Below the pieces are notes generated by a model. That model saw only the letters and a program-made list of their open reading frames with translations. It was not told the origin of the DNA and did not search any database. Positions 14,642-45,741 of a stretch of DNA of 64,000 nt are shown here, piece by piece. Where the stretch lies: IMG/VR virus record IMGVR_UViG_3300015261_000002, positions 1-64,000 of that record; one strand, 5' to 3'. Within the stretch, counting starts at the first letter, position 1. Every line of letters begins with the position of its first letter. A program made the position numbers and the translations under genes.

Positions 14642-14687
14642 TATAACCCCTCCTGCCCCGCAAAGGGCAGGAGGGGTTATAGCTGCT
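14642..14687. terminator. 17-bp stem-loop at a convergent junction (TATAACC family)
   Basis: TATAACCCCTCCTGCCC-CGCAAA-GGGCAGGAGGGGTTATA. Confidence 0.8.
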
Positions 14688-14689
14688 AC

Positions 14690-15118
14690 TCAATAAAACC
14701 CTTTTCCATCGCGATTATCGAAGACAAAGATTTGACCATAGACACTGATCAACGCATTGTTGTTTCGATTTACCACCTCATTAAAGATCCAGAGGTCTTT
14801 TGAGTGAGGGGTATCCTCTGAACAGTGAGGAGCATAGGCCCTGATGTACCCACACATTTCCTTGTTGGTATAAGACACAGGGAAACGACACAGCCAGCCC
14901 AAAACGTTTCCGGAAAGCTGGGGCTCCTTCACCATTGCATCACGAATCATTGTTACCGTTCCGGCGTAGATTCCTAATCTGTACCAGAACGTCATACCGT
15001 CATCAGTCAAGGTAAGGCCGTAGAGCAATCCGCGTCTTTCCTTTCGTCTGACCACCAGTAAGACAACAACGGCAAGCCAGATCATAACCGTTATCAAATT
15101 CATGATGAGCTCTGACAT
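14690..15118 (-). CDS. Hypothetical membrane-anchored protein
   Basis: N-terminal hydrophobic helix followed by RRKERR. Confidence 0.7.
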   Translation of the reverse strand: MSELIMNLITVMIWLAVVVLLVVRRKERRGLLYGLTLTDDGMTFWYRLGIYAGTVTMIRDAMVKEPQLSGNVLGWLCRFPVSYTNKEMCGYIRAYAPHCSEDTPHSKDLWIFNEVVNRNNNALISVYGQIFVFDNRDGKGFY

Positions 15119-15123
15119 ACCTT

Positions 15124-15858
15124 TTACCTTCGAGCAAAAATGCGGTTATAGTTATTCTTCACAAGTCCTCCGATGTACTCAGGGTCGTCGGCTAGAGCTT
15201 GGAAGTTTCTTAACTGCTCCTGCTTGTTGTTAAGGACCATAATTGGCAGCGTTTTCCACGCCGTTCCACGTCGGCCAAAGCGTTCGGCAAAGCTACCCGC
15301 CAGCGCCAAGCACCATTCATCAGGGTCCATGGGGGCGAGATTCGGCGTAGAATTGTTTCTGACGAAATCAATGACCATCTTTGCGTGGTTCGGATAGAAG
15401 ACGTCTGTTAACAACCGCACCTCATTCGCAATGACTGAGATAGCGGTATCGACTGAGGGACGCAAGTTCATGGTAGTGGCTCGGCGACAACACTTGTAGA
15501 TGCTTTGAATTTCGTCGTCGGTAAAGAAGCCATCCGAGTGTTCATTCAAAAAGACAACCGCAAAAGCTGCTGATGCATCATTAGGGGTAGAACCATCATA
15601 GGTCCTGCCGGTCTCCATGAGCATCGTTACAGCGTACATGATGTGAAGAGCACCCGTAGGGAGGGAATGGAGATCAGACAGCTCCTTGGTAGCACACAGA
15701 GCGTTGTAGAGCCACTCATGATCGTAACCTTTAGGGTTTTTCTTCATGTGATTAAAAATCTTGAAGATAAAGTCCAAAGGTAGATGATTGCCAACGACGG
15801 TTAAGATCCCTTGAAACGTCTGAAAGTTTTTACGGTCCGCTGAACGGAAGCGGTTCAT
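15124..15858 (-). CDS. Degenerate HD-domain-like protein
   Basis: Spacing matches the HD fold (GYDHEW...AVTMLMETG...DASAAFA...FTDDEIQSI), but ME replaces HD. Confidence 0.5.
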   Translation of the reverse strand: MNRFRSADRKNFQTFQGILTVVGNHLPLDFIFKIFNHMKKNPKGYDHEWLYNALCATKELSDLHSLPTGALHIMYAVTMLMETGRTYDGSTPNDASAAFAVVFLNEHSDGFFTDDEIQSIYKCCRRATTMNLRPSVDTAISVIANEVRLLTDVFYPNHAKMVIDFVRNNSTPNLAPMDPDEWCLALAGSFAERFGRRGTAWKTLPIMVLNNKQEQLRNFQALADDPEYIGGLVKNNYNRIFARR

Positions 15859-15881
15859 AAGCTACTCCTGTCACTTAAGGC

Positions 15882-15926
15882 AAAAAAATAAAAGAGTAAG
15901 AGGTGGGGAGGAATACCCTCCCCATT
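15882..15926 (-). terminator. Intrinsic terminator
   Basis: TGGGGAGG/CCTCCCCA stem, then TCTTTTATTTTTTT on the minus strand. Confidence 0.65.
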
Positions 15927-15928
15927 CC

Positions 15929-16402
15929 TCAGTCTACTTCAGTCATGTTCGAAAAGTATTCAGAGAAATCAAATGCACTGCTAATACTCGCAGCAGTACA
16001 CTTATCCGAAATCAATTTCGTCACGCCCGTCTGTAAACTGTAATACGCCGAAATGACACCGCCCTTATCCATGTAGCCCACTGTAGTGAACTGTTGCCCA
16101 TCCGCCGAGTAGATCTCTCGCGTGTCGGTTGCCTCCGACGCTGAATGGTGGTAGGACGTACCCATGTCATTCCCTTGTTTCACGATCGTCTGTTCTGGTA
16201 GAACAAGGTCCTTACCGTAGAGAATCGTAAAGGTATCCGTCTTGGGGTCATGCAACACCAGGAGACTTTTGCCAGCCTCTGTATCGCAACTCAACAAGAC
16301 ATTTTCACGATGCTCTTTTGGTATTTCGTCAACAACGCCTGCCATAACAGAACTGGACTGAACGGAAACAAAGAACAGGAACAGCGCAACAAGCAAGCGC
16401 AT
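15929..16402 (-). CDS. Secreted or periplasmic protein with a signal peptide
   Basis: MRLLVALFLFFVSVQSSSVMA signal-like N-terminus; two Cys. Confidence 0.75.
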   Translation of the reverse strand: MRLLVALFLFFVSVQSSSVMAGVVDEIPKEHRENVLLSCDTEAGKSLLVLHDPKTDTFTILYGKDLVLPEQTIVKQGNDMGTSYHHSASEATDTREIYSADGQQFTTVGYMDKGGVISAYYSLQTGVTKLISDKCTAASISSAFDFSEYFSNMTEVD

Positions 16403-16443
16403 AACTTGACTCCTTTGATAAAGGGGAATATTCCTAATCCCCC

Positions 16444-16479
16444 AAAAAATAAAAGACAGAGGATTTCTCCTCTGTCTTT
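16444..16479 (-). terminator. Intrinsic terminator
   Basis: AAAGACAGAGGA/TCCTCTGTCTTT stem with a minus-strand T-tract. Confidence 0.75.
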
Positions 16480-16487
16480 CGTCCTGG

Positions 16488-17378
16488 TTAGATCAGTGTT
16501 ACGTTGTTAACCGAACCACAGGAGAAGCGATTGCCCTCCATGGCTTTGTTGTACGACGCGATACCTTGCTCGAGAGTGACGTTCTGAGATTTAGGGGTGT
16601 GGATCACACCGGCCACTGCACGAGTGGAGATGTGAGGTACACCGTCTTCGTCCAGATACAGTTCGTTGAGCGAGAAGTAGTCGTCGTCGATCAGGGCGAT
16701 TGGAATGGAGATACCGTCTTTATCCAGAGTCGCCACGCCGCACAGCTTCAGTGTGCCACCGATCGAGGAACGGTGATCGTCTTTCACAACGCCTTTAACA
16801 GCCTTTACCGCTTCGACCACTTTCGCGAAGCCGTAGCCACGCGTAGTGTTGACCACTGCCAGAGCACGGTCATCGGTCGATACTTCATCGTCAGGTACCA
16901 CACGCGCCACAACGCCCTTTTCCGGCATTGTTTCGGAAGCCACGTCAACACGCTTGGCGATACGGGCTTTAACGCCTGCATCAACCAGCGCATTAACATA
17001 ACGGCTGATGTTTTCTTGCGGGTGGTAAGTGCAGACGATCAGTTCCAGCTTCTCGGCAGTCAGTGCTGGTTCGCCGATGAAAGGACGCAGTGCCTTTGGT
17101 GCGTGCCAGGTCAGGATAAACGGCTGCTGGAGGTCTGGCGAATAACGTTCGAATACCACGACGGTACCCAGCACGGTGCCGATCAGAATGATGCGACGTG
17201 CCGTTGTTGGGCAAATGGTCTTCACCACTTGACCTTCAGCTACGAAGCAGTCAACAGCATGGTCGAAGTAACCAGTACCGTTTTTCCAGTCTGCATCAAA
17301 ATCGATTGCCACTTCCAGGCGCTGAAAGAGAGCAGTGAAATTACGAGCAATCAGTGCAGCAGAGGTAGAAATAGTCAT
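16488..17378 (-). CDS. Hypothetical early protein (WKNGTGYFD...VVVFERY N-terminal domain)
   Basis: RBS GGAG; directly downstream of a TATATTAC motif. Confidence 0.8.
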   Translation of the reverse strand: MTISTSAALIARNFTALFQRLEVAIDFDADWKNGTGYFDHAVDCFVAEGQVVKTICPTTARRIILIGTVLGTVVVFERYSPDLQQPFILTWHAPKALRPFIGEPALTAEKLELIVCTYHPQENISRYVNALVDAGVKARIAKRVDVASETMPEKGVVARVVPDDEVSTDDRALAVVNTTRGYGFAKVVEAVKAVKGVVKDDHRSSIGGTLKLCGVATLDKDGISIPIALIDDDYFSLNELYLDEDGVPHISTRAVAGVIHTPKSQNVTLEQGIASYNKAMEGNRFSCGSVNNVTLI

Positions 17379-17426
17379 GCGGTATTACTCCGGAGTATGA
17401 AAGACTTAATTGTCTTAATCACATGA

Positions 17427-17434
17427 GTAATATA
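17427..17434 (-). promoter_or_regulatory. phiKZ-type early promoter motif TATATTAC
   Basis: Exact match to the phiKZ early consensus, intergenic, about 50 nt upstream of an ATG. Confidence 0.7.
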
Positions 17435-17459
17435 GACCCAAAAAACAATGTATCTTAAA

Positions 17460-17499
17460 TATAACCTCTCCTAGCCTGTAAGGGCTAGGAGAGGTTATA
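17460..17499. terminator. 17-bp stem-loop (TATAACC family)
   Basis: TATAACCTCTCCTAGCC-TGTAAG-GGCTAGGAGAGGTTATA. Confidence 0.75.
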
Positions 17500-17506
17500 A
17501 GTGCAG

Positions 17507-18118
17507 TCACACAACTTTCTTGCGCTGGTCTTGGCCGATCGTCAACTCATACACTTCCTTCACAGGAATGATGCCCGTGCTTGGGTACAGCATAACGTGC
17601 GGGACGTTAGCCGCATACTTGTTGTAACCCCAGTCAAAGTCAGGGCGTGCTTTCGCCGCCAGATAACCAAACTTAGTGGTGCCTCTGGATAAGGTTTTGA
17701 GGAAGGCTTTGAACTCGGCTTTACTGTGCCCGACCTCGCCGTACTTCCTTTGCATCTTAAACAATTCAGCATTCCACAAAACGAGTGTTCTTGGGTCACC
17801 ATCTTCCCAGTTATGCTCTTTGGAGAACTCGTCCAGCAGTTCAGTCTTGCGGGCGCTTTCCACCACACGGAAACTGAACTTATCTTCCAGATCATCAACA
17901 TCGATCACGTGCTCGTAGAGCTTATGTCCCTTATACCAAAAAGGATGTCCTTTATCAAAGATATCCGGCATCAGCTTAGAGGGAATGGGATCGAAGAAGA
18001 ATGAGATATGGTCGAAGTAGTCGTCTGAGACCTTTACCCCAGGAGGCCCCGGAAGCCCGGATACCCGACGACTTTGCAGCTGGACGTATTGTGCGTCGGA
18101 ATAATGATAGAGCTTCAT
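17507..18118 (-). CDS. Conserved jumbo-phage hypothetical protein (MKLYHYS...HISFFFDPIP...VPHVMLYP)
   Basis: 203-aa ORF in a minus-strand operon. Confidence 0.75.
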   Translation of the reverse strand: MKLYHYSDAQYVQLQSRRVSGLPGPPGVKVSDDYFDHISFFFDPIPSKLMPDIFDKGHPFWYKGHKLYEHVIDVDDLEDKFSFRVVESARKTELLDEFSKEHNWEDGDPRTLVLWNAELFKMQRKYGEVGHSKAEFKAFLKTLSRGTTKFGYLAAKARPDFDWGYNKYAANVPHVMLYPSTGIIPVKEVYELTIGQDQRKKVV

Positions 18119-18126
18119 GGCGATCC

Positions 18127-18315
18127 CTACTTCTTAGGCAGTTGCAGGTCCATGCCGTAACCGAATTGCTTAGGCGGGTCAGCACGCTTTACAAAGTTCG
18201 GATCTTCCTTCAGCCCTTGAGGGCTCCAGGGTTGACGCTCTGGGGGAACGGTCGAGTAGACCTTACCCAAAGAATCCAGGTGAAGCCGTTGGCGCATTTC
18301 GTCATCAGGTGTCAT
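18127..18315 (-). CDS. Small hypothetical protein (62 aa)
   Basis: RBS GAGG; fills an operon gap. Confidence 0.6.
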   Translation of the reverse strand: MTPDDEMRQRLHLDSLGKVYSTVPPERQPWSPQGLKEDPNFVKRADPPKQFGYGMDLQLPKK

Positions 18316-18349
18316 AGCCTTATCCTCGTGTAGACTATAGCATCAATCG

Positions 18350-19150
18350 TTATGCGTCTTCAGCGGGAGTTGGATACGGCGCTGTTGCTGTCGCAAATTC
18401 ACGACTGGAGACACGTTGAGTAGGAGTGTCCGATACAACAAGATTGCCCAAAGTCTTTTGGTGCCGTTCCAAAAGACTGTCCACAGTTGGAACTACTTCG
18501 GGAACCGGACGTTGCTTCATCTTGTCGATGACCTTCATCAACTCAGGCATGATCTGTGCATACACCTGGTCTGGGTTTACCTCGGCATTTACCAGCACGT
18601 AACGCCCGTCGTGAATCCGGAACTTGGTTAGGTTCACATAGTTCCAACGAGCCACATTCAACTTTTCCATCGCCATGGAATCAAATTGATCGCGTGCCAT
18701 TTCCTCTGGGGAGATGCGTTTCTGAAAGATAGCAGGGTCACCATCCAGCAGGAACGTAATGTCCGGAAAGAAGTCACCATGCACGGCGTGGTGAAGATCC
18801 AGGAGTTTCTTCAGCCCCGCATCATGCTGGAAAGCAAACGTCGAATCGCAGAAACGATCACACAGTACAACTTTACCTTCTTGCAATGCTGGTCTGATAA
18901 CGTCTTTGATGTTCTCTGCCCGCGCGGCATTGAACAGTAACGCTACTGTTGTCGGATCCAGTTTACCTGGATTGCCCGGAATACCTTCACGACACAGCTT
19001 ACGCAGGTACTCAGCCGCAAAGGTACCGCCTGGCTCACGAGTACGCACGTACGGCACGTTGGCTTGTTGCAGTTGCGCTTCCATACGGTCCAGCACTGTG
19101 GTCTTACCAGAGCCCCCTAGCCCTTCTACAACGATTAACTGTCCTTTCAT
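18350..19150 (-). CDS. tmk: Thymidylate (dTMP) kinase
   Basis: VEGLGGSGKTT P-loop, TREPGG, LCDRF and PDITFLLD motifs. Confidence 0.95.
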   Translation of the reverse strand: MKGQLIVVEGLGGSGKTTVLDRMEAQLQQANVPYVRTREPGGTFAAEYLRKLCREGIPGNPGKLDPTTVALLFNAARAENIKDVIRPALQEGKVVLCDRFCDSTFAFQHDAGLKKLLDLHHAVHGDFFPDITFLLDGDPAIFQKRISPEEMARDQFDSMAMEKLNVARWNYVNLTKFRIHDGRYVLVNAEVNPDQVYAQIMPELMKVIDKMKQRPVPEVVPTVDSLLERHQKTLGNLVVSDTPTQRVSSREFATATAPYPTPAEDA

Positions 19151-19530
19151 TGAGTTGATGCCTTTTCAAGAGAAATAATGAGAGCCTCTACAGAATCCAT
19201 GGCATCTTTCAATAACGGTGGTTGAGCCACCCAAACAGAACCGTCTGGATAAAAGTCAACCACCTTACGAATGGGGCGGGATGGTCTGTAACGATCTCCC
19301 ACCACTTTGTCAGCTTCTTTCTGTACAGACAGGGCTCCGTTACCCCAGCTGTCATGCAGCGTGATAAGGAAACCGTTTAACTTTTGAGGACCCAATACCT
19401 TAAGCCTAGATTGAGCCTTCAGTCTAGCATACAGCCCTTTATAATCGTAAGCCGTCTTAGTCCCCACAGGTCGCTCCTTAAGCCACCGCTTCTTCCTGTT
19501 TAAAGGCGGGAAGTTTTCCCACCATTTCAA
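19147..19530 (-). CDS. Hypothetical protein (127 aa)
   Basis: ATGA-coupled to tmk; overlaps the upstream gene by 53 nt, so the start is uncertain. Confidence 0.55.
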   Translation of the reverse strand: MKWWENFPPLNRKKRWLKERPVGTKTAYDYKGLYARLKAQSRLKVLGPQKLNGFLITLHDSWGNGALSVQKEADKVVGDRYRPSRPIRKVVDFYPDGSVWVAQPPLLKDAMDSVEALIISLEKASTQ

Positions 19531-20422
19531 TATGAGCTTTCACAAAACGCTTGAAGTCATATACCGCGTTATGGTATTCGTGTTTATCAAACGTAATGTC
19601 GTACTTCCAGCTAAACAACTTACTCATTTCACTTACCAGATCCATCGCATCGTCAGGCAGCCCGACGTCAGACGGCAACCCATATCCACACATAATGCGA
19701 ATATGAGCTGGAATGTCAGTCAGAGCCACTTCCCAATGCTCGCGCATTTCCATATCCAGCTGCCGGCCAATTTCCTTTAGCTTTGTTGGATAGGCGTTAT
19801 AGGAGGCTTTATTTTCACGGCGGTGTATCGAGGCCTTGCCGTTAACCAAGGTCAGGTCTTTTAGCTTCTGCGGCAATATCGCGTAAATTTCTTTCTTGGT
19901 CAAATCCCACAGCGGCATGCGGAAAGGTGTCTCGAGGTTGTCCGCATTACCCAGTCGTCCGATAAGTGCGGGCATTGTGGTGATCAAATCGTGATAGTCC
20001 TGTTCGGAGTGATCCCACTCTTCCAACGAACTCTCAGCAGCATCCGCACGATTCCAACCAATCCAGGTACCAGGGCACTCGTCATAATTCATACGACGGA
20101 TATCGGCCATACCCAAAACAGTGGCCAATTGTTGGACAATGGAATTGCAGACCTGGTTCTCACCATCACTGCGTTTCATCCGTGCCGGGAATGGCGAAGA
20201 GAAACGGTAGGATACGTCCGCAATACGTCCACCTCCCGGAAATTCCATTTTCTTTACTTCCTGCACGATCAGCCACATTGCATACGCTTCATACATCATG
20301 GTCTCGGGAACCCCGGACACATTGATCATGTGCAAGTTAACTGTAAACCCTCGACGGAGGGCGAGTACCAACAAAGCGGTAGAGTCGATACCTGAACTGA
20401 AAGCAATGTTGACGTGTGGCAT
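19478..20422 (-). CDS. PP-loop (QueC-like) adenine-nucleotide alpha-hydrolase
   Basis: N-terminal IAFSSGIDST PP-loop and MPLWDLTKKEI (QueC PLxxxxKxEI-like). No C-terminal Cys cluster. Confidence 0.65.
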   Translation of the reverse strand: MPHVNIAFSSGIDSTALLVLALRRGFTVNLHMINVSGVPETMMYEAYAMWLIVQEVKKMEFPGGGRIADVSYRFSSPFPARMKRSDGENQVCNSIVQQLATVLGMADIRRMNYDECPGTWIGWNRADAAESSLEEWDHSEQDYHDLITTMPALIGRLGNADNLETPFRMPLWDLTKKEIYAILPQKLKDLTLVNGKASIHRRENKASYNAYPTKLKEIGRQLDMEMREHWEVALTDIPAHIRIMCGYGLPSDVGLPDDAMDLVSEMSKLFSWKYDITFDKHEYHNAVYDFKRFVKAHIEMVGKLPAFKQEEAVA

Positions 20423-20850
20423 TATTTCTTCTTCCTTGCTTTACGTTGAGGAGGTGCTATGTAATCGGGATCTGTGAAAATATGAACGTGTTCGGGACGC
20501 ACACCCAGCTCCAGTCCCTGAACCTCGGCAATACGACGTTTAATGAGATCTGGAAGAACCCGCATCTCACGGAGTACCGTTTCTTCGGAAAGGTACACGT
20601 CAGTGTGATGCCCTTTCTTAGAGTAGGGTCTTAGCACGAGAGACACGCCATCATAACCAATCTCCGCAACCGGAGAACGAAGGTTCTGGAAATCGTAGAA
20701 GTAAATGTTCGGTGACGAATGTTCACGTCTAACAATGACAATTGTTAAATCGCCAGCCCAGATACCTGATACGTTATCAGACAGCGTCCGGACTACTTCT
20801 TTGTACAACGCCTTTAGTTCTGCGTTCAGTTCTTTTGTTTTAGCGGCCAT
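20422..20850 (-). CDS. Hypothetical protein (about 142 aa, basic C-terminus)
   Basis: Start MAAKTK chosen because the longer ORF runs through a terminator and into the upstream gene. Confidence 0.7.
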   Translation of the reverse strand: MAAKTKELNAELKALYKEVVRTLSDNVSGIWAGDLTIVIVRREHSSPNIYFYDFQNLRSPVAEIGYDGVSLVLRPYSKKGHHTDVYLSEETVLREMRVLPDLIKRRIAEVQGLELGVRPEHVHIFTDPDYIAPPQRKARKKK

Positions 20851-20870
20851 TAATAAATTCCCCATTGGAC

Positions 20871-20907
20871 AAAAAATAAAACACCACCCTCCGAAGAGGG
20901 CAGTGCT
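20871..20907 (-). terminator. Intrinsic terminator
   Basis: CCCTC-CGAA-GAGGG hairpin (TTCG loop on the minus strand) plus TTTTATTTTTT. Confidence 0.7.
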
Positions 20908-20914
20908 ATTGCGG

Positions 20915-21736
20915 TTAGGCGGCCGCCGCGAAGTGCGACAAGATGTAGTCTTCAACCGCGTCGATCTGCTCGACGATCATTTGCGACCACGGCTCGAACG
21001 GACAGTCAGGGTTCTTGAACAGCGAATCGTTCTTGAGTTCATCGGCGGATGCCCAGGCAACGGCGTCGTTCTGAGGCTCGGCCATGTCGAAGCGAACGGC
21101 TTCAGAAGCGTCGATGGCGTACACCACACCGTAGTGGATGTTGCCGACGTAACCCGGTTCTGGTTTGCTGTCCATGACGAAACCGATTTTGTCGAACGAC
21201 TTACCGACCGTAGCGTCCTGGGCGTCGATCATGACACCGTTGGTAACGTCGTGACCGTCTTTGTCGAACAGCTTGACTTCTTCACCACCTTCGCGTTGAA
21301 CGGAATCATCGGTGGTTTCACCCAGGTCGATGATCGGGGTTTGCGTCAGCATTTCGTTTTCGACGATCTGGTGGTAAGAAAGATCGTAGCCTTCGATGTG
21401 GCCACCGGCACCCAGGCTCAACTTGGAGGCCAGACGACCTTCGTTGTTGGTCTTATTGCGACGGTAGACCATGAAGACAACCTGAGGGCGGTCTTGCTGG
21501 AGGTTTTGGACGATGCGGTAGAACAGGATGTAACCGATGCCTTGGCGCAGCAGTTCGAACTTGCCATTCAGCGCACGTACGGAGCCCATGGTGATGGCGT
21601 CGAGTTCGCGGATTGCTTGTTGCAGCTTGTCCTGCGGCAACAGCGTGAACGCGTTGTCAGGAACGATAGCGGCCAGGGATGGGCCGTGTACGCCGTAGGT
21701 GAATTCAGCGCCTTTAGGGATAGACTTCAACAGCAT
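20915..21736 (-). CDS. Nudix-family hydrolase (COG4112-like)
   Basis: YRR...EGRL..KLSLGAGGHIE...QREGGEEV...VGNIHYG. Confidence 0.8.
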   Translation of the reverse strand: MLLKSIPKGAEFTYGVHGPSLAAIVPDNAFTLLPQDKLQQAIRELDAITMGSVRALNGKFELLRQGIGYILFYRIVQNLQQDRPQVVFMVYRRNKTNNEGRLASKLSLGAGGHIEGYDLSYHQIVENEMLTQTPIIDLGETTDDSVQREGGEEVKLFDKDGHDVTNGVMIDAQDATVGKSFDKIGFVMDSKPEPGYVGNIHYGVVYAIDASEAVRFDMAEPQNDAVAWASADELKNDSLFKNPDCPFEPWSQMIVEQIDAVEDYILSHFAAAA

Positions 21737-21763
21737 GGGTGTTACTCCTGATGGATTAAACGA

Positions 21764-22699
21764 TTAGTCGTGACCGTGTTCACGGTAGTATTCGTTACGG
21801 GCTACACCTACCTGGTGAATCTCTTCCCAGGTCTTGCCCCCGAAGTTGTAGAACATACAGATAACCCAGCCCAGTGTAAGATGACCGTTGCGTTCACGCT
21901 CGCAGTTCACAAGGCTGATACTGTTGACTGGACGCAGTGGTTCACTTTCCAGAGCGGCAATCAGCGCTTGGCGGTGCTCTTCACCCTTAGCACCGAGCGG
22001 GGTCGAATAGCGTTCAGCACGCCACACTACCCAGGGATGATCATCCACTCCTACAGCCTTCTGACCAAAAGGACTCGGTTCATCCTTCTGGGGTTTGTAG
22101 AAGAGGCCATGGAAGCGGAGTTTTTCTTCTTTCGCTAAATCAGCAACAGCTGCGGTATAGTTTTTGCTAGCCATTTTTGGGTCTGCTTTGTTGAGAGTGG
22201 CGGTCATTACGACTTCCCTGTTGTATGGATTGAGTTGATATGCCCAAGGACTGATAACGTTTACTTGCCGTGTGGTGATTGGCGCAGCCAGGGAAACGCG
22301 CGGATCTACTTCTACCGTGCGAATATGTCCCTTGAAGTCAGGGTCTAGTTCCAAAGCTGCGTCGATAAGCGCCAGGTAAGTACCCGGACCCGCCATCATG
22401 TCCACAGCCGTAGCATCGTACCACTTGACTATGGCAGCGGATAAAACCTGCCGTAGCGTAAACGTGTTCATTGTTTTGGAGAGAAAACAATGCGTCTTGA
22501 TATCGCCATAGACATAATTGTACCAAGGGACGAACCCATCAGTATAAAACAAATGGCGGACAGACACTTCTAATTTGTTCTCTTCGAACTCGGGGGCTGT
22601 AAATACCGTGACTAAATAGTCCTTAATTACAAACTTGTCTTTAGGGCCAAAGAACACACCCATTTTAACAAGTAGTTCTACTAGCTCGTAGGTATCCAT
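21764..22699 (-). CDS. Hypothetical protein (311 aa)
   Basis: Long ORF in the operon; N-terminal LVKMGVFFGP motif. Confidence 0.75.
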   Translation of the reverse strand: MDTYELVELLVKMGVFFGPKDKFVIKDYLVTVFTAPEFEENKLEVSVRHLFYTDGFVPWYNYVYGDIKTHCFLSKTMNTFTLRQVLSAAIVKWYDATAVDMMAGPGTYLALIDAALELDPDFKGHIRTVEVDPRVSLAAPITTRQVNVISPWAYQLNPYNREVVMTATLNKADPKMASKNYTAAVADLAKEEKLRFHGLFYKPQKDEPSPFGQKAVGVDDHPWVVWRAERYSTPLGAKGEEHRQALIAALESEPLRPVNSISLVNCERERNGHLTLGWVICMFYNFGGKTWEEIHQVGVARNEYYREHGHD

Positions 22700-22702
22700 G
22701 GA

Positions 22703-23377
22703 CTACACCAATAAGCCGTTGTCGGCATTCACCATCAGTCCATTGATAACGTCGTTGTAGCGATGCAACGCATCTTTAAGGGTTTGATTGAAAGATACCC
22801 GTTCCATAGACCCTGGATAAATTTCGTACTTACCGTTCTGATGGTAGTTCATGAACCACCGGGCTTCGAGGAGGCCGTGTAATTCAGGTTGTTGCAGCTG
22901 GCCCAGACGAAAGATAACGTCGGTCGGATCTGAATGGTCCATACGAACCACCAGCTGACCTACCAGGATGTCAGGCAGCTTGGCCTCGAAGATACCGCGC
23001 TTGGCCAGTACCCACATCATTGCTTCTGGCGACAGCTGGTCTGATAACTCGCTGTGTTCTTTGCTCACGACGTAACGAGGAAGAGCCAGCGACACAGTCG
23101 ACCGGAGGGTGCTCTTTGAAATCAACCGGGTCCTTACCTCAGAAAGAACTTTTTCAATCACGTCCCGCGGGTAACCATCATTTACATCAAGTCCCGCCGG
23201 AGACAGTACCGCGATAGAGTCGGCGATCTGACTCGGGGACGGTAGCGAGATGTGGATCATTTTTGAGGCTAACCGAACGTCTACCTTGAATGTCGGCGTT
23301 CTTTCTGCCAGCTGTGCCGTCACTAGGTATTCTTCCGGACCCTCAAAAATACCCAACTGTCTTAATTCATGATACAT
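22703..23377 (-). CDS. Hypothetical protein (224 aa) with a possible internal repeat
   Basis: LRQLGIFEGP and LAKRGIFEAK motifs. Confidence 0.75.
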   Translation of the reverse strand: MYHELRQLGIFEGPEEYLVTAQLAERTPTFKVDVRLASKMIHISLPSPSQIADSIAVLSPAGLDVNDGYPRDVIEKVLSEVRTRLISKSTLRSTVSLALPRYVVSKEHSELSDQLSPEAMMWVLAKRGIFEAKLPDILVGQLVVRMDHSDPTDVIFRLGQLQQPELHGLLEARWFMNYHQNGKYEIYPGSMERVSFNQTLKDALHRYNDVINGLMVNADNGLLV

Positions 23378-23414
23378 GATCCACCCCCAGTAAAAAATGA
23401 AAATGCGTAATAGT

Positions 23415-23455
23415 GGATGACTAAGGATCTCTCCCTAGTCATCCTTTATCGCTGC
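23415..23455 (-). terminator. Stem-loop preceded on the minus strand by GCAGCGATA
   Basis: GGATGACTA...TAGTCATCC inverted repeat after the stop codon at 23463. Confidence 0.6.
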
Positions 23456-23462
23456 GGGTTAC

Positions 23463-23903
23463 TTAGCCAAACAGTTTGGCTGCCAGCGAGGCTGCGCTGT
23501 CACGGTGTTCTTGCAGCCAGTCGGTTTGCTCTTCGCTGTGGTAGTAGTCGATGGCAGTGGTGGACACGCCATGGATGAAGTCGTCGCCCACTTGCTGTTG
23601 CAGGTGGTGTTGGGAGTTGACGGTGAAACCGCCGAAGTCCAGGGTGCCGTCGATGGTGGTCAGCTTGTTGTTGTCAGCGAACTGATCGCGTGCGATTTGC
23701 GAAGTAGCAACTTCGACCTGGCCGGACAGTTGGTTGATGTAGGTCACGTGGGCCTGCATGGATTCCGGGGTGATGTCTTCCGGCAGTTCCAGCTTCGAGG
23801 CATCGAACGTAGCGTGGTTGGTCGCCTTGTCGTAAGTCGAGTTTTCAACCAGTTGTTTAACGGCTTCGTTCTGTGCGGCAGCGTATTCTTTATTCAAGCT
23901 CAT
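23463..23903 (-). CDS. Acidic, probably highly expressed early protein (146 aa)
   Basis: RBS GAGG before MSLNKE, strong codon bias, upstream TATATTAC motif. Confidence 0.8.
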   Translation of the reverse strand: MSLNKEYAAAQNEAVKQLVENSTYDKATNHATFDASKLELPEDITPESMQAHVTYINQLSGQVEVATSQIARDQFADNNKLTTIDGTLDFGGFTVNSQHHLQQQVGDDFIHGVSTTAIDYYHSEEQTDWLQEHRDSAASLAAKLFG

Positions 23904-23997
23904 TGTAAACCTCGTGAGTACAGGTGTGTGAAAAATAAGGAAGCAAGAAGAGGTGGTGTCCACGTCCCCCCAGACGGTAAGTCTGTTGCTCGGGAAA

Positions 23998-24010
23998 GTA
24001 ATATAGGTTT
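23998..24010 (-). promoter_or_regulatory. Early promoter motif AAACCTATATTAC
   Basis: Intergenic; the same 13-mer occurs at 47985-47997. Confidence 0.72.
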
Positions 24011-24043
24011 CAAATATTCTAACCCAAACAACAGACCTGGACC

Positions 24044-25063
24044 TTACTCGCTCAGTGGCTTGTCGAGAGTTTCACCGGCGAACGCCATACCTTCTTGCAC
24101 ATCAGCTTTAACTTGCTCAGCCGTGCCGTTAGCATTAACACCGACGGTCAGAGAAGATGCGCGCATCGCTTCTACCAACTGAGGAACCGACAGCTGGGAA
24201 GTCGACAAGAGTTGACGCATTTCGTCAGACAGCGGAGAAACAACCTGGACGTTATTGCCGTACAGCTCTTTCACGTGTTTGATGGTGCCTACCGGATCCT
24301 GATCATCTTTATCAATGATCACGGTCACCACACCAGCGCCGAGCATTGCAGCCACGTCACCCAGGTTATCGAACGGAGAGTCAGTGGCCAGCATGTCCAG
24401 CATGTCGAACGGGTTGTCCAGCAGGACAGTGCCTTCCGATACCGGCGAGTGATAGTAGGCGATCACCTGGCCGATGGTTTTCAGGAAGTATTCGTTGGTG
24501 AAACCGTCTTTCTCGAACATGGCTTCAAACATGTCGATCGAGCCCAGGTATTCAACCAGTGCAGTGTCGTGGTTCTCGGTGAGGTCGTAACGGGTCGCCA
24601 TGTACGACACCAGCGCCGTTGCCTTCTCACGAGGGGTAGTGGCTGCTGCCAGAGTGATCACGCCTTCATCGTAGCCCAGGAGGCGCACACCGACCATTTT
24701 GAACAGGTCGAGGTGGTCGTGGAACACATCGGCGGCGATGCGGTTGGAAATGGCAACGTTGGTGTTGTTTTCGGAAGCAACAGTCGCTTTGCTCCACGCG
24801 GTCAGATGGTTACCCACCGAACGCATGTTCTGCGCAACGATCTTGGCGATGTAGATGTGAACGGCATCGGACTTGATCGTGCTGACAGCCACACCCTTGA
24901 TCAGGTGGTTGTCGGTGTTTGCGTCTTTGGCGTTGTCCCATTCCTTCGAGGAGGTTTCCAGCAACGCCTGAACGATTTTGATACCGCCGGTGACTTCGCG
25001 CAGCGTGTTTACGAAAGACAGGGTTTCCAACAGCTGGGTAGCTGCACGCGATTGAGTATCCAT
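24044..25063 (-). CDS. Hypothetical protein (about 339 aa)
   Basis: RBS GAGG before MDTQSR; strong codon bias. Confidence 0.8.
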   Translation of the reverse strand: MDTQSRAATQLLETLSFVNTLREVTGGIKIVQALLETSSKEWDNAKDANTDNHLIKGVAVSTIKSDAVHIYIAKIVAQNMRSVGNHLTAWSKATVASENNTNVAISNRIAADVFHDHLDLFKMVGVRLLGYDEGVITLAAATTPREKATALVSYMATRYDLTENHDTALVEYLGSIDMFEAMFEKDGFTNEYFLKTIGQVIAYYHSPVSEGTVLLDNPFDMLDMLATDSPFDNLGDVAAMLGAGVVTVIIDKDDQDPVGTIKHVKELYGNNVQVVSPLSDEMRQLLSTSQLSVPQLVEAMRASSLTVGVNANGTAEQVKADVQEGMAFAGETLDKPLSE

Positions 25064-25130
25064 TGCTTCATCCTCTATGTTTTTAACAAAACGCACTAAT
25101 GGCTATATCTATAACCATGCCGTGAATAAA

Positions 25131-25166
25131 TATAACCCCTACCAGGTGTGAGCCTGGTAGGGGTTA
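25131..25166. terminator. 14-bp stem-loop (TATAACC family)
   Basis: TAACCCCTACCAGG-TGTGAG-CCTGGTAGGGGTTA. Confidence 0.7.
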
Positions 25167-25172
25167 ATGGGG

Positions 25173-26033
25173 TCACTTGAAGACCGAAAGTGCACTGGAA
25201 CGAACGATCTGAATCTTCTTGTCGTGTTGACCACGAAGACGTTGTTCTACTTCACGGATCATCGAAGTAACCCGCTCGTAACTTTCAGTACCAGCAAAGC
25301 GGGCTTGCGCGGCTTCGCTGTTTACCTTTTGCTTGCACATGAACAGGAACTCGTCAACCGTTGCTTCGACTTCGGCTGGCGTTGGGTTGTAAAGCGCGGT
25401 AGAGAGGAAGTCCTCCAGACCTGCTGTGCGGTGCTTGCAGGCTTCCAACATGCCCTGCTCCATTACCACGTCATAACCCGTCCAGTATTCCACCTCACGA
25501 ACGCGGTCACCCATCTGTTGCGGCTTGGTCACCGTACGGATGGAAATCGCCGTGTTCATGTCTGGATCTTCGATGCTGTCCTGGAACACTTCCTTGAGAG
25601 GACCGAACGAACGGATCTCCACCTGGTTGTGTACCGGGTCACGATCGCTACCCGTGATGTGGAAATGGATCTTCCGGATCGACGCACAGACGTTGGGTTC
25701 CAACACGGTACGCAAACGGTGGATCCACTGGTACAGATCCGTGATAGGCGTTTGAATGATGCGACCGCCTTCACGGGTCCAGAAGTACTGCGGAGGATGC
25801 CCCAGTTCACACCAGAGCTGGTTTTCGGCGGCACGACGGTTGAGGTCGCTGTCCGGGTTCATGCACTCTTTGACATACTCGTTGAAGCGATAACCCACAC
25901 CACCTCGGTTGAGGATGTTGAAACCACCTGCGTTCATCAGGTAGTAATGACCACCGGGTTCCATGGGCTTGAGAATACCCTTCTTGCCCGTCTGTGGCAG
26001 GATGGTACTGCCAAAGGTTAACTTCTGACTCAT
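25173..26033 (-). CDS. Prohead maturation protease (phiKZ gp175-like)
   Basis: ELGHP, AISIR and GYDVV motifs; G-L-E candidate autocleavage site; synteny. Confidence 0.85.
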   Translation of the reverse strand: MSQKLTFGSTILPQTGKKGILKPMEPGGHYYLMNAGGFNILNRGGVGYRFNEYVKECMNPDSDLNRRAAENQLWCELGHPPQYFWTREGGRIIQTPITDLYQWIHRLRTVLEPNVCASIRKIHFHITGSDRDPVHNQVEIRSFGPLKEVFQDSIEDPDMNTAISIRTVTKPQQMGDRVREVEYWTGYDVVMEQGMLEACKHRTAGLEDFLSTALYNPTPAEVEATVDEFLFMCKQKVNSEAAQARFAGTESYERVTSMIREVEQRLRGQHDKKIQIVRSSALSVFK

Positions 26034-26755: not shown

Positions 26756-26758
26756 CGA

Positions 26759-29411: not shown

Positions 29412-29413
29412 CT

Positions 29414-33787: not shown

Positions 33788-33791
33788 ACCT

Positions 33792-35408: not shown

Positions 35409-35435
35409 TTAAAAATTATCCCTTAGGAGTTAAAG

Positions 35436-43445: not shown

Positions 43446-43450
43446 CTGTA

Positions 43451-43490
43451 TGGGAGGTGGGGTCACACCCACCTCCTCTTTTTTCTTTTC
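43451..43490 (+). terminator. Intrinsic terminator
   Basis: GGAGGTGGG/CCCACCTCC stem plus TCTTTTTTCTTTT. Confidence 0.75.
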
Positions 43491-43509
43491 ACCCACCAGG
43501 TATTTATCA

Positions 43510-45684
43510 ATGGCCGTAACAATTCGAGACAGGGACATTATCACCAAGTCGTTCCGTCTATTGACCCGTGGCGTACAACCCAGTGACCTGCTTCAACAAA
43601 TGGACTGGGATCGTTACTTCAACGTGTTCAGTAGTGCGACGGGTGACAACCGTTACGTTAACCCGATTCCACAATGCAGTCCCGCTACCGATCCTCGCTA
43701 CAGCCGTTTCCTCAACTCCTCTGAGGGCGGCATGGGTAGCATGTACAAAGAGGTGTACGAGAATAACGTCACCCTCTTGACCCTGACACCAAGCGTCCCT
43801 CAGTTTGCAGGACTGCTCAGCTTTATCACGAACATGTTCAGCCCTACTGCTGCGATCATTGCTAACAAAGGTCGTGCCCCCGGTACAGCGTTCTACATGG
43901 GTCAGGCGGCTACCGCTATTGCCTTCTGGCCAATGCAGCTTATCAGTATCAGTATTCAGTTCTTGGCCTTCCTGACCGATGCGCCTAAGAACAACTTCTG
44001 GACCTGTAAGCCTGCAATGGGTGCTTACACCATGGCAGCGACGGGCATCATGAACGACCTCATGGTTAAGCTGGGTTACATCGACCCGGTACTGCCTAAG
44101 CGTAACCAGGAACAAACGGATACCCTTTACGGACGTCCTGCTGATTACGACAACAGCAAAGCGGTTCAAGACCTCAGCTTGTTGATGCCGGACGTGATTA
44201 ACGCCGACGGTACACTCGACCTGATGCGTCTCATCATGAAGGGTACTCGTAAACACCGGGTGATGCTGAATAAGCTCGCTGCGATGGATAACGAGGCACT
44301 GACCACTCCTGATGAGAAACTGAGCCGCGCACAACAGCTCATGGAAGAGGTCACGTTTGATGACACTGTCTGGGCAGGTGATCCTACTCAAGAGTTTATT
44401 GAGAAGGAGATGAACTCGGTTGGCAAGTACCGTGGTGACGATGAAGGCAAGTTCGTTGAGCAGGACAGTGCGTACGCAAACGAAAGTGCTTATTCGAACA
44501 TCAACAACGCTGACCAAGGTTTGGCTTCCTTCGGGGTAGACCAGTCCAGTGCAGCGAATGGCGGGGCGGGCTCAAGCGCTGGGATGGAACCTTCCAGTCA
44601 GGGTGCTCCAGGTGCTACACCAGGTATTAACCCTAACCAACAATCCAATCGTCCTCAACCGGCTTCTTTGCAGACAGGTGGTAGCGCAGCGTTCGCTAAC
44701 GGGCAAACCATCTCGTACGAAGACAACCCGAATGACCGTACCTGGGCAGGCGATGTGGCCGACCTTGTACAGACGGCCTTCTCGGGTGGTCTCGATGCGA
44801 TCACGTTCCGGGTGGATGGTGCAGTAGGTCCTGTGACCGACAGCTTCTCGAACAGTCACTCTCCTTCTCCAATGGCGGAGAAGTTCAACTCGGTTGTTAA
44901 AGCTGCCAACGACTTCCGCTTTGACGTGGCGGGTGGTGCAACCGGTATCGGTATTATCGACTCTGTTGTTAACACCATCAAGGAAGGTGCTATCGGTGCG
45001 CTGTCTGGGACAGTAATCGGTAACATCCCCCTGGCGTTGGTTAACAACAGCTCTGTGAAGATTGCAGACCACTGGGACGGTTCGACAACTAACCTGCACA
45101 AGGAAAGCTACTCGATCTACTCCCACTGCAACTACGCTCACCCGTATGAACAGATCATGAAGGTCTGGGTACTGCTGTCGTTGTTCCTCCCGATGGTGGC
45201 TCCAAACAGTGCGGGTGGTTCTACTTACACCTCGCCGTTTATGTTGAAGGCTTTCTGTAAGTCGCGTTCGATCATTCGTACCGGCATGATGGAATCCCTA
45301 ACCTTTACCCTCGGCAGCGGTGATGGCGGGTGGACAATTGACCGTAAGCCGTTGAACATCAAGATCGACTTCACTATTGTTGACCTTGAGCCGTTGATCA
45401 CTGTTCCAGTTGACCGCTCCTTGAGCCTGCTGGACTTGACCAACCCATCGCAGGTAGCCAACCGTCTGTTTAACGACGACACGGCGTGGAACAACTTTGC
45501 ATCCCGTTTGACCGGTGTGGATTACCTTGACACCGTCATGAAGTACGCACGTCTCAACCGTAACCTCACAGGTATCTCCCTTGATATGAAACAGAGCATC
45601 CGGGCTGACAACATTGCAGCCAAGGTGAACGACTCGATCATCGGTGACCTGTCGCGTATCTTTGTAAGACCTGTTGCACGATAA
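43510..45684 (+). CDS. Virion tail/baseplate protein (phiKZ gp182-like)
   Basis: Follows the gp181-like gene; GMGSMYKEVYE and YTSPF motifs. Start MAVTIRD lies after the terminator. Confidence 0.7.
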   Translation: MAVTIRDRDIITKSFRLLTRGVQPSDLLQQMDWDRYFNVFSSATGDNRYVNPIPQCSPATDPRYSRFLNSSEGGMGSMYKEVYENNVTLLTLTPSVPQFAGLLSFITNMFSPTAAIIANKGRAPGTAFYMGQAATAIAFWPMQLISISIQFLAFLTDAPKNNFWTCKPAMGAYTMAATGIMNDLMVKLGYIDPVLPKRNQEQTDTLYGRPADYDNSKAVQDLSLLMPDVINADGTLDLMRLIMKGTRKHRVMLNKLAAMDNEALTTPDEKLSRAQQLMEEVTFDDTVWAGDPTQEFIEKEMNSVGKYRGDDEGKFVEQDSAYANESAYSNINNADQGLASFGVDQSSAANGGAGSSAGMEPSSQGAPGATPGINPNQQSNRPQPASLQTGGSAAFANGQTISYEDNPNDRTWAGDVADLVQTAFSGGLDAITFRVDGAVGPVTDSFSNSHSPSPMAEKFNSVVKAANDFRFDVAGGATGIGIIDSVVNTIKEGAIGALSGTVIGNIPLALVNNSSVKIADHWDGSTTNLHKESYSIYSHCNYAHPYEQIMKVWVLLSLFLPMVAPNSAGGSTYTSPFMLKAFCKSRSIIRTGMMESLTFTLGSGDGGWTIDRKPLNIKIDFTIVDLEPLITVPVDRSLSLLDLTNPSQVANRLFNDDTAWNNFASRLTGVDYLDTVMKYARLNRNLTGISLDMKQSIRADNIAAKVNDSIIGDLSRIFVRPVAR

Positions 45685-45698
45685 AAACTCAGTGGTAA

Positions 45699-45741
45699 CT
45701 ATAACCCCTCCTACCCCGCAAAGGGTAGGAGGGGTTATAGC
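45699..45741. terminator. 18-bp stem-loop at a convergent junction, near-copy of 14642-14683
   Basis: CTATAACCCCTCCTACCC-CGCAAA-GGGTAGGAGGGGTTATAG. Confidence 0.8.

What the first reader, a model, noticed from the sequence alone, without database searches (positions are those of the whole stretch)
14642..45741. Dispersed TATAACC hairpin family with compensatory substitutions
Seen: 14642-14683 and 45700-45741 match at 40 of 42 nt, and the two differences are the two halves of one base pair (G-C vs A-T). Copies at 17460 and 25131 keep TA(TA)ACC...GGTTA ends with further paired changes and 6-nt loops containing GCAA, GTAA or GTGA. This points to selection on structure plus end sequence. Three copies (14642, 25131, 45699) lie at or near core/accessory boundaries, so the family may also act as a recombination site for cassette exchange (inference).
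Basis: partly seen in the sequence, partly recalled or inferred. Interest (0 to 1): 0.6.

Follow-up and report, generated by a model that had tools for sequence, protein, structure and literature searches.

The report
Jumbo-phage transcription terminator hairpins

Summary
All four hairpins are perfect palindromes, and the two differences between 14642 and 45700 are the two halves of one base pair. The window belongs to a complete 224,747-bp nucleus-forming jumbo phage (Chimalliviridae) from IMG/VR, about 52% identical in tail sheath protein to phages EL and RisingSun.

The genome holds 26 strong hairpins. Twenty-five are intergenic: 17 lie between convergent genes, 8 lie mostly 4-14 nt after a stop codon (one 35 nt), and none lies between divergent genes. 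Most have a pyrimidine-rich 5' arm. The named copies end in GGTTATA, the same design as the mapped phiKZ terminator motif (CCYCCCC...GGGRRGG, then TTAT).

Orthologous hairpins in metagenomic relatives differ only by fully compensated pairs. Perfect palindromes dominate at convergent junctions. G-U-bearing hairpins occur at same-strand (tandem) junctions and fold only on the sense strand. This points to RNA-level, often bidirectional, termination.

The recombination idea is not specifically supported. The relatives are collinear through 25133 and 45699, and breakpoints follow gene boundaries whether or not a hairpin is present.

Two side findings: loops are repeatedly flipped to their reverse complement among close relatives, and the 17460 hairpin sits in a composite terminator-promoter cassette that resembles the PeSL cassettes of T4-type phages.

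The parts
14642..14681 (.). Named copy 1. A 17-bp perfect palindrome with loop CGCAAA, lying between the convergent genes 13732-14634 (+, virion structural protein) and 14690-15118 (-). Read as a bidirectional terminator. Tails: TTATAGCTGCT on the + strand, TTATATTTAC on the - strand.
   Evidence: Orthologous hairpins are present in 16 of 18 related loci with compensated stems. EL carries a hairpin with the same loop at the orthologous spot.
17460..17499 (-). Named copy 2. A 17-bp perfect palindrome 7 nt after the stop of minus-strand gene 17507-18118. The sense tail is UUAUAUUUAAG.
   Evidence: Homology with relatives breaks at 17489/17498.
17365..17459 (-). Promoter-like leader cassette directly downstream (in the sense direction) of hairpin 17460. 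It contains TTTAAGATACA, CTATATTAC and a conserved leader stem-loop, and runs into the start of gene 16488-17378. Together with the hairpin it forms a composite terminator-promoter unit.
   Evidence: The core resembles the promoters annotated in EL. It is an island of homology between two variable ORF slots in the relatives.
25133..25166 (-). Named copy 3. A 14-bp perfect palindrome 6 nt after the stop of minus-strand gene 25173-26033. The sense tail is UAUUUAUU.
   Evidence: The simple scan flags it as terminator-like on the - strand. Relatives carry different, compensated stems here. No synteny break.
45699..45740 (.). Named copy 4. An 18-bp perfect palindrome with loop CGCAAA, lying between convergent genes 43450-45684 (+) and 45745-46848 (-). 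Both tails read TTATAG.
   Evidence: The inner 15 bp of the stem are identical in all six close relatives that cover the site, and the full 18 bp in five; two of them have the loop flipped to TTTGCG. No synteny break.
2510..2543 (.). Further hairpin at a convergent junction (1819-2502 + / 2551-5826 -). One pair is G-U on the + strand.
48585..48613 (.). Further perfect palindrome at a convergent junction (48006-48563 + / 48623-49360 -).
53357..53392 (.). Further perfect palindrome at a convergent junction (52502-53341 + / 53401-54918 -). The stem is invariant in close relatives while the loop varies. The - tail is GTTTATGGCT.
57563..57594 (.). Further perfect palindrome at a convergent junction (56809-57549 + / 57605-59332 -). 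The - tail is CGTTATGGCT.
63239..63272 (.). Further perfect palindrome after gene 62198-63229 (+), at a convergent junction.
16452..16479 (-). Second-class hairpin with a purine-rich 5' arm, followed on the sense (-) strand by UUUUAUUUUUU. It looks like a canonical terminator after gene 16488-17378. Homology with several relatives breaks at 16480.
23415..23444 (-). Second-class hairpin after minus-strand gene 23463-23963. It is conserved in the close relatives.

Best explanation
The TATAACC hairpins are intrinsic (hairpin-dependent) transcription terminators of a phiKZ-like, nucleus-forming jumbo phage. They are the local version of the conserved Chimalliviridae terminator motif.

Proposed mechanism. 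The RNA polymerase transcribes a C/U-rich arm, a short loop and a G/A-rich arm. A very stable hairpin (about -25 to -35 kcal/mol) forms. A short weak tail, UUAU(A/G), follows in place of a long U tract, and the transcript is released there.

At convergent gene pairs the element is a perfect palindrome with ATAA on the left and TTAT on the right, so transcripts from both strands fold and end at it (bidirectional terminator). After same-strand genes only the sense strand needs to fold.

What is shown and what is inferred. Shown here: the anatomy, the position at gene ends, strand-aware pairing, compensated evolution, and the similarity to the phiKZ motif. Shown in the literature for phiKZ and 201phi2-1 only: that transcript 3' ends map to such motifs, and that eight 201phi2-1 terminators stop transcription in vivo. 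Inferred for this phage: that termination happens at these sites, and which polymerase is stopped.
For: Identity of the genome:
- The tail sheath protein is about 52% identical to those of RisingSun and EL.
- The genome encodes chimallin, PhuZ and four split RNA polymerase beta/beta' genes.
- It is a complete record with direct terminal repeats.

Position:
- 25 of 26 strong hairpins lie in the 4.4% of the genome that is intergenic (p = 3e-33).
- 17 lie at the 29 convergent junctions and 8 after same-strand genes, mostly 4-14 nt (one 35 nt) after the upstream gene's stop codon. None lies at the 28 divergent junctions.

Strand logic:
- At convergent junctions, 16 hairpins are perfect on both strands and 1 contains G-U.
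- At tandem junctions, 7 are perfect and 11 contain G-U. All 11 fold only on the transcribed strand (Fisher p = 9e-4; binomial p = 1e-3).
- At tandem sites the sense-strand tail is T-rich: 4.8 versus 2.4 T in 8 nt (Wilcoxon p = 7e-4).

Covariation:
- All 238 pair cells are paired and 8 of 17 pairs change on both sides; 0 of 500 shuffles match this.
- Hairpins persist at orthologous sites in relatives at 97%, 78% and 71% protein identity, with unrelated stems.

Link to the known motif:
- 61 phiKZ terminators mapped by ONT-cappable-seq share a CCYCCCC...GGGRRGG hairpin followed by TTAT (PMC10914365).
- In 201phi2-1, 132 termination sites were mapped, motif A resembles the phiKZ motif, elongated stems terminate more strongly, 15 sites are bidirectional and 8 were validated in vivo (PMC11512511).
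- A covariance model built only from this clade's copies (window and IMG/VR relatives) hits phiKZ at 14831-14883 (E = 4e-8), 27645-27693, 25202-25248 and 34902-34951, and EL at 2313-2344 (E = 1.6e-5).
- The published phiKZ motif itself matches 27660 and 34908/34918.
- 19 of 25 hairpins have a pyrimidine-rich 5' arm.
Against: - There are no transcript data for this phage.
- There is no long U tract at 14642 (+) or at 45699, so the canonical bacterial terminator rule is not met there.
- 17460 and 25133 are perfect palindromes although only one strand obviously needs them.
- Gene calls come from my own codon-usage caller. Some small ORFs that define 'convergent' junctions may be wrong.
- 3' ends at stable hairpins can also arise from exonuclease trimming rather than from termination.
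Confidence: 0.85

Rival explanations
1. The hairpins are primarily DNA-level recombination sites. Similar 30-40 bp palindromes at module borders would provide the homology or cruciform for swapping gene cassettes.
For: - Homology with relatives ends within a few nucleotides of hairpin edges at 14688 (L016), 16480 (L004, L006, L014, L016) and 17489/17498 (L001, L002, and also R62 and R08).
- 17365-17499 is an island of homology between two variable ORF slots.
- Loop flips show that the palindromes undergo DNA-level events.
- T4-type phages use composite stem-loop/promoter cassettes (PeSLs) in this way (PMC2839356, PMC4122927).
Against: - There is no break at 25133, 45699, 46885, 48585 or 53357 in any close relative; 31 kb there is collinear.
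- In the variable region, 9 of 10 junctions without a hairpin are also breakpoints. The association is not significant (p = 0.25 overall, p = 1.0 within the region).
- Replacements are ORF-precise. Selection for intact genes with any conserved regulatory flank predicts the same pattern.
- G-U-bearing, sense-only hairpins at tandem sites make no sense for a DNA-level site.
Confidence: 0.1
2. The hairpins do not stop the polymerase. They protect mRNA 3' ends, acting as barriers to 3' exonucleases or as processing sites, so that stable transcript ends form there after read-through transcription.
For: The stems are very stable, perfect and sit right after stop codons, and the U tract is weak. Mapping of 3' ends in phiKZ cannot by itself separate termination from trimming.
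Against: Eight 201phi2-1 terminators of this kind reduced downstream reporter expression in vivo (PMC11512511). The conserved direction-specific tail after the stem (TTAT, T-rich on the sense strand) is not needed for an exonuclease block. The two roles are not exclusive.
Confidence: 0.15
3. The family is a mobile palindromic element (REP- or MITE-like) that has spread through the genome. The 40 of 42 nt match would reflect a recent copy.
For: Copies are dispersed, short and palindromic, and two are near-identical.
Against: - Flanks are not shared between copies.
- Every copy sits at a gene 3' end.
- Hairpins occupy orthologous positions in relatives as distant as EL, RisingSun and phiKZ, with unrelated stem sequences.
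- Given the family consensus (8 invariant and 8 two-state positions), I estimate that a match at 16 of 17 stem positions happens by chance about one time in ten.
Confidence: 0.03
4. The palindromes are binding sites on double-stranded DNA for a dimeric protein, such as a regulator or a nucleoid or packaging factor.
For: Perfect dyad symmetry and conserved outer half-sites TATAAC/GTTATA.
Against: Inner stem sequence is free to vary as long as pairing is kept. Stem length varies from 13 to 18 bp and loop length from 3 to 8 nt. Sense-only G-U variants exist. This pattern fits a folded single strand, not a sequence-read duplex.
Confidence: 0.04

Closest known systems
Conserved intrinsic terminator motif of phiKZ (61 mapped sites; Putzeys et al. 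2024, PMC10914365) and motif A and A/B of 201phi2-1 (PMC11512511)
   Same: - Pyrimidine-rich 5' arm, purine-rich 3' arm, and TTAT directly after the stem.
- Location after genes in a phage that transcribes with its own RNA polymerases.
- Symmetric ATAA...TTAT versions at convergent genes (phiKZ 25214 and 34917).
- A model of this clade's copies detects the phiKZ and EL sites.
   Different: - Stems here are 13-18 bp instead of about 7-9 bp; the genome has 52% G+C against 37% in phiKZ.
- Loops are mostly 6 nt (often CGCAAA or its flip) instead of UUCG-type tetraloops.
- The tail consensus is TTAT(A/G)GCT rather than TTATKYYGT.
- Transcript ends have not been mapped in this phage.
Bidirectional intrinsic terminators between convergent bacterial genes (general knowledge, not checked in a paper here)
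   Same: One symmetric hairpin flanked by an A-rich and a T-rich side serves both strands. It must be Watson-Crick on both strands, which is the pattern seen at 16 of 17 convergent junctions.
   Different: The tail is a short UUAU-type segment with a specific following sequence, not a long U tract. The polymerase stopped is presumably the phage's own non-canonical enzyme.
PeSL (promoter-early stem-loop) cassettes of T4-type phages (PMC2839356, PMC4122927)
   Same: At 17365-17499 (and at 64.3 kb and 148.1 kb) a terminator stem-loop is fused to a conserved early-type promoter and leader. It sits in a hyperplastic region and stays conserved while the ORFs on either side are swapped.
   Different: The phage family and promoter are unrelated. 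Most hairpins of the family (14642, 25133, 45699 and all convergent ones) have no such promoter. The association of hairpins with breakpoints is not significant.
REP elements and other dispersed bacterial palindromes
   Same: Short, dispersed, imperfectly conserved extragenic palindromes.
   Different: Here they occur one per gene end, are positionally orthologous across distant relatives, have no clustered or mobile arrangement, and lie in a phage genome.

Membership tests
phiKZ-type conserved intrinsic terminator (Chimalliviridae) | Hairpin with a C/T-rich 5' arm (CCYCCCC) and a G/A-rich 3' arm (GGGRRGG). | tested here: met
   The named copies read CCCCTCCT...AGGAGGGG. 19 of 25 strong hairpins have a pyrimidine-rich 5' arm. 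Model R1 cross-hits phiKZ and EL sites that also fit the published motif.
phiKZ-type conserved intrinsic terminator (Chimalliviridae) | 5'-TTAT-3' immediately after the stem. | tested here: met
   GGTTATA follows the stem at 14642, 17460 and 45699 on both strands, and at 25133 on the sense strand. In the wider set the tail is TTAT(A/G)GCT or T-rich.
phiKZ-type conserved intrinsic terminator (Chimalliviridae) | Lies at gene 3' ends or intergenic regions of a phage with its own multisubunit RNA polymerases. | tested here: met
   25 of 26 are intergenic and none lies at a divergent junction. RNA polymerase beta/beta' fragments, chimallin and PhuZ are encoded.
phiKZ-type conserved intrinsic terminator (Chimalliviridae) | Transcript 3' ends map at the motif, and it lowers read-through. 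| not testable with these tools
No RNA data exist for this uncultivated phage.
Canonical bacterial intrinsic terminator | G+C-rich hairpin followed by a U tract (at least 5 T in 8 nt). | tested here: inconclusive
   The hairpin criterion is met everywhere. The simple scan flags 25133 (- strand) and part of 14642 (- strand), but not 17460 or 45699. Tails at 14642 (+) and 45699 hold only TTATAG.
PeSL-like composite terminator/promoter cassette | Stem-loop fused to a conserved early promoter, flanking variable ORFs in hyperplastic regions, with breakpoints at the cassette. | tested here: inconclusive
   Met at 17460, and the same composite is present at 64346 and 148142. Not met at 14642 or 45699, and no such promoter motif was found near 25133. 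Breakpoints are not enriched at hairpin junctions.
GNRA-tetraloop hairpin | Four-base GNRA loop closed by a Watson-Crick pair on the functional strand. | tested here: not met
   Loops are 6 nt. At 17460 and 25133 the GNRA-like reading is on the antisense strand. Loop orientation flips between relatives.
REP/MITE-like mobile palindrome | Copies inserted without regard to gene ends, shared flanks or target duplications, and presence/absence polymorphism of the bare element. | tested here: not met
   Flanks are unrelated. All copies lie at gene 3' ends. Positions are conserved in relatives.

The most novel reading that the evidence does not exclude
The perfect palindromes are kept perfect and diversified mainly by DNA-level template switching within the hairpin. 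This would flip loops and copy one arm onto the other in a single step, so many of the 'compensatory substitutions' would be single mutational events rather than paired selection. Where such a hairpin is fused to an early promoter (17365-17499 and its three paralogues), it would act as a PeSL-like portable junction that lets Chimalliviridae swap small early genes. A further speculative element: the TTAT(G/A) tail resembles the TATG core that the phiKZ non-virion polymerase reads at late promoters, so termination might use a promoter-like pause signal.
Probability: 0.25. Interest if true: 0.5.

Novelty: new member of a known kind. Interest (0 to 1): 0.25.

Why it matters
The result gives a ready map of transcription-unit ends for an uncultivated jumbo-phage lineage. 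It extends the phiKZ terminator design (C-rich arm, G-rich arm, TTAT) to a 52% G+C clade with much longer stems, which suggests that the phage polymerases read a conserved signal.

The contrast between perfect palindromes at convergent genes and sense-only G-U hairpins at tandem genes is a simple sequence test for bidirectional termination, and it could be applied to other phages.

The frequent loop flips are a clean natural example of template-switch mutation in functional hairpins. None of this changes the current picture of how these phages work.

Tried and rejected
- Megablast of 14000-18000 against GenBank phages found no match. Relatives were found by protein search instead.
- Rfam gave no family at gathering score in the window.
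- The supplementary terminator tables of the phiKZ and 201phi2-1 papers are not held. I could not check whether the phiKZ sites hit by my model are among the mapped ones. I used the published IUPAC motif instead.
- Counting G-U pairs in minimum-free-energy folds of whole intergenic regions was uninformative because of spurious flank pairing. A strand-aware stem scan replaced it.
- I considered that the recurrent TATGGCT after hairpins marks start codons of genes missed on the other strand. Only one case (167080) is a real start. The others open no ORF with coding signal.
- Hairpins as breakpoint hotspots: tested and not significant.
- The 40 of 42 nt match as evidence for a recent duplication: rejected as unnecessary given the family consensus.
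- One search was a misjudged alignment and has no value.


Full report
**1. The observation**

- 14642-14681 has a 17-bp perfect stem and 45699-45740 an 18-bp perfect stem. Both have the loop CGCAAA.
- 17460-17499 has a 17-bp stem and the loop TGTAAG.
- 25133-25166 has a 14-bp stem and the loop TGTGAG. Its perfect stem begins at TAACC.
- 14642-14683 and 45700-45741 match at 40 of 42 nt. The two differences (14655/45713 and 14668/45726) are partners of one pair.

By a simple estimate, about 0.1 perfect stems of 12 bp or more are expected in a genome of this size. About two dozen are present.

**2. What the window is**

The window is the first 64 kb of a single 224,747-bp contig with 51.6% G+C. 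The record is a complete IMG/VR virus genome with direct terminal repeats.

ORF 11547-13718 is a tail sheath protein, and the next gene (13732-14634) is a virion structural protein. The sheath is 52-53% identical to those of Erwinia phage RisingSun and Pseudomonas phage EL, and 230 phiKZ-like records match it. The genome also encodes chimallin (the nuclear shell protein), PhuZ tubulin, a T4-like DNA polymerase, an SbcD-like nuclease and four split RNA polymerase beta/beta' genes.

It is therefore a nucleus-forming jumbo phage (Chimalliviridae). Megablast finds no close cultured relative.

**3. Genome-wide census and position**

My codon-usage gene caller gave 235 genes after gaps were filled. 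A hairpin scan gave 26 strong hairpins with folding energy of -20 kcal/mol or lower.
- 25 of the 26 lie in the 4.4% of the genome that is intergenic (p = 3e-33).
- 17 lie at the 29 convergent junctions.
- 7 lie after minus-strand genes in tandem and 1 after a plus-strand gene. These sit mostly 4-14 nt (one 35 nt) after the upstream gene's stop codon.
- None lies at the 28 divergent junctions.

Seven convergent gene pairs in the window carry one: 2510, 14642, 45699, 48585, 53357, 57563 and 63239. Of the named copies, 14642 and 45699 sit between convergent genes. 17460 and 25133 follow minus-strand genes.

A covariance model built from 14 copies finds about 17 loci in the genome at E <= 1.

**4. 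Strand logic**

I scanned each strand separately, allowing G-U pairs.
- At convergent junctions, 16 hairpins are perfect on both strands and one has a single G-U.
- At tandem junctions, 7 are perfect and 11 contain internal G-U pairs. All 11 fold only on the transcribed strand.
- Fisher p = 9e-4 and binomial p = 1e-3.
- At tandem sites the 8 nt after the stem hold 4.8 T on the sense strand against 2.4 on the antisense strand (Wilcoxon p = 7e-4).

This is what RNA-level terminators predict. It also explains why the named copies show no G-U intermediates. Where both strands are transcribed into the element, a G-U on one strand is an A-C mismatch on the other.

At convergent sites the tails recur as TTAT(A/G)GCT, often TTATGGCT or TTATAGCTGCT. 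These are not hidden start codons, apart from one real gene start at 167080.

**5. Relatives**

Three scans of IMG/VR gave loci from relatives at three distances: about 97%, 78% and 71% identity of the virion protein. I merged the pieces into stretches of about 50 kb for eight relatives.

A hairpin follows the virion-protein gene in 16 of 18 loci, with many different stems. On an alignment of 14 paralogous and orthologous copies, all 238 pair cells are paired and 8 of 17 pairs change on both sides. No shuffle and no slid register comes near these values.

Some sites keep the same stem in every close relative examined while the loop varies (48585, 53357; at 45699 the inner 15 bp are invariant). 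Others change several pairs (14642, 17460, 25133). Rare intermediates exist: an A-C mismatch in R24 at the 25133 site and an outer mismatch in R08 at 45699.

**6. Comparison with what is known**

ONT-cappable-seq of phiKZ mapped 133 termination regions. Sixty-one of them share a hairpin motif, CCYCCCC...GGGRRGG followed by TTAT (PMC10914365).

In 201phi2-1, 132 termination sites were mapped. The main motif resembles that of phiKZ, co-occurring motifs give longer stems and stronger termination, 15 sites are bidirectional, and eight terminators worked in vivo (PMC11512511).

My scan of 50 kb each of phiKZ, RisingSun and EL shows the same design.
- phiKZ has short CCCTCCC-UUCG-GGGAGGG stems followed by TTTAT.
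- phiKZ also has symmetric ATAA...TTAT versions at convergent genes, and a 16-bp palindrome with TATAAA ends at 14839-14875.
- EL and RisingSun have 12-15-bp stems.
- EL carries a hairpin with the loop CGCAAA at the spot orthologous to 14642.

The model built only from this clade's copies (window and IMG/VR relatives) hits phiKZ at 14831-14883 (E = 4e-8), 27645, 25202 and 34902, and EL at 2313-2344. The published phiKZ motif matches 27660 and 34908/34918. The family is thus the local form of a known terminator type. Rfam has no model for it.

**7. The recombination idea**

Close relatives (80-86% nucleotide identity) are collinear in a single 31-kb alignment from 24.3 to 55.7 kb. That alignment runs through hairpins 25133, 45699, 46885, 48585 and 53357.

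The region 14.7-24.3 kb is hyperplastic. Small minus-strand genes are gained, lost or replaced ORF-precisely. Some breaks coincide with hairpin edges (14688, 16480, 17489/17498). However, 9 of the 10 junctions without hairpins in that region are breakpoints too. Overall the association is not significant: 5 of 10 hairpin junctions against 9 of 34 others, p = 0.25.

Hairpin 14642 marks the left edge of the variable region in all relatives. The simple reason is that it ends the conserved tail-sheath operon. So 'near a core/accessory boundary' is true for 14642 and roughly true for 25133 (about 840 nt inside the conserved side). It is false for 45699.

**8. Side findings**

(a) Loop flips. Among close relatives the loop is often the exact reverse complement while the stem is unchanged or nearly so:
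- CGCAAA/TTTGCG at sites 14642 and 45699;
- CGAAAA/TTTTCG at site 14642;
- CAAACA/TGTTTG and TGTTAAG/CTTAACA at site 17460.

Loop inversion is a recognised footprint of template-switch mutation, which can also repair or copy stem arms (PMC8794818). Some of the 'compensatory' changes may therefore be single events. Loop orientation is evidently not under selection at bidirectional sites.

(b) A composite cassette. Hairpin 17460 is followed on the sense strand by a conserved block: TTTAAGATACA, then CTATATTAC, then a leader stem-loop. The block recurs at 64.3, 111.1 and 148.1 kb, and in three of the four cases it sits directly after a terminator hairpin. Its core resembles the promoters annotated in EL. 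In the relatives, 17365-17489 is an island of homology between two variable ORF slots. This resembles the PeSL cassettes of T4-type phages (PMC2839356, PMC4122927).

(c) The tail and the phiKZ late promoter. The TTAT(G/A) tail contains the TATG core of phiKZ late promoters (PMC4666361). Whether that has any meaning for termination is speculation.

**9. Verdict**

The structural-selection reading is right, and the element is an intrinsic, often bidirectional, terminator of a known jumbo-phage type (confidence 0.85). The cassette-exchange reading is at best a side effect at one composite site.

Limits:
- No transcript data could be obtained.
- The gene calls are my own.
- Only about 50 kb of each relative was compared.

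Noticed in passing
Window 14642, 17460, 45699, 48585 and their orthologues in L001-L039: Among relatives 14-20% diverged, loops are repeatedly the exact reverse complement of each other on unchanged stems: CGCAAA/TTTGCG, CGAAAA/TTTTCG, CAAACA/TGTTTG and TGTTAAG/CTTAACA. This looks like a footprint of template switching or intra-palindrome inversion.
   Followed up: yes
Window 17365-17459 (-); genome 64259-64345, about 111040-111110 and 148085-148141: A conserved promoter-plus-leader block (TTTAAGATACA ... CTATATTAC ... GTGATTAAGACAATAAGTCTTTCA) occurs four times, three of them directly after a terminator hairpin. TATATTA occurs only 9 times in the genome, 8 of them intergenic. The core resembles EL's annotated phage promoters.
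   Followed up: partly
Window 14690-24300: A hyperplastic region of small minus-strand genes. Nearly every gene junction is a homology breakpoint against close relatives, and replacements are ORF-precise. Gene 17507-18118 (phrog_23338) is absent from five relatives. Gene 16488-17378 is replaced by a shorter unrelated ORF in five relatives.
   Followed up: partly
Window 16452-16479, 20880-20907, 23415-23444, 46885-46906, about 15893-15926; genome 95771, 153463, 185334, 210319, 216862, 219564: A second class of gene-end hairpins has purine-rich 5' arms or G-U pairs. They fold only on the sense strand, and many are followed by a canonical U tract such as UUUUAUUUUUU. This may be a different terminator class, or serve a different polymerase or expression phase.
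   Followed up: partly
Tails of hairpins at 2510, 14642, 53357, 57563, 63239 (window) and 145608, 167085, 177346, 183435, 219564 (genome): A recurrent sequence TTAT(A/G)GCT(GCT) follows the stem. It contains the TATG core known as the phiKZ late promoter and start site. It is enriched after genes, not before them (TTATG occurs 24 times against 5 expected in the 60 nt downstream of genes).
   Followed up: partly
Window 11532-13640 (-) opposite 11547-13718 (+): A 702-codon open frame runs antisense to the tail sheath gene and has no family match. Several other long shadow ORFs exist, so ORF length alone misleads in this genome.
   Followed up: partly
Window 47669-48006: An unusually long (about 340 nt) intergenic region contains a promoter-like CCTATATTAC on the minus strand at about 47992 and folds strongly. 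It was not examined further.
   Followed up: no
Whole genome, 60 nt downstream of genes: CTAG-containing words (CTAGA, ACTAG, CTAGG, GCTAG) are enriched about 6-10-fold after genes, because they are common in the terminator stems.
   Followed up: no
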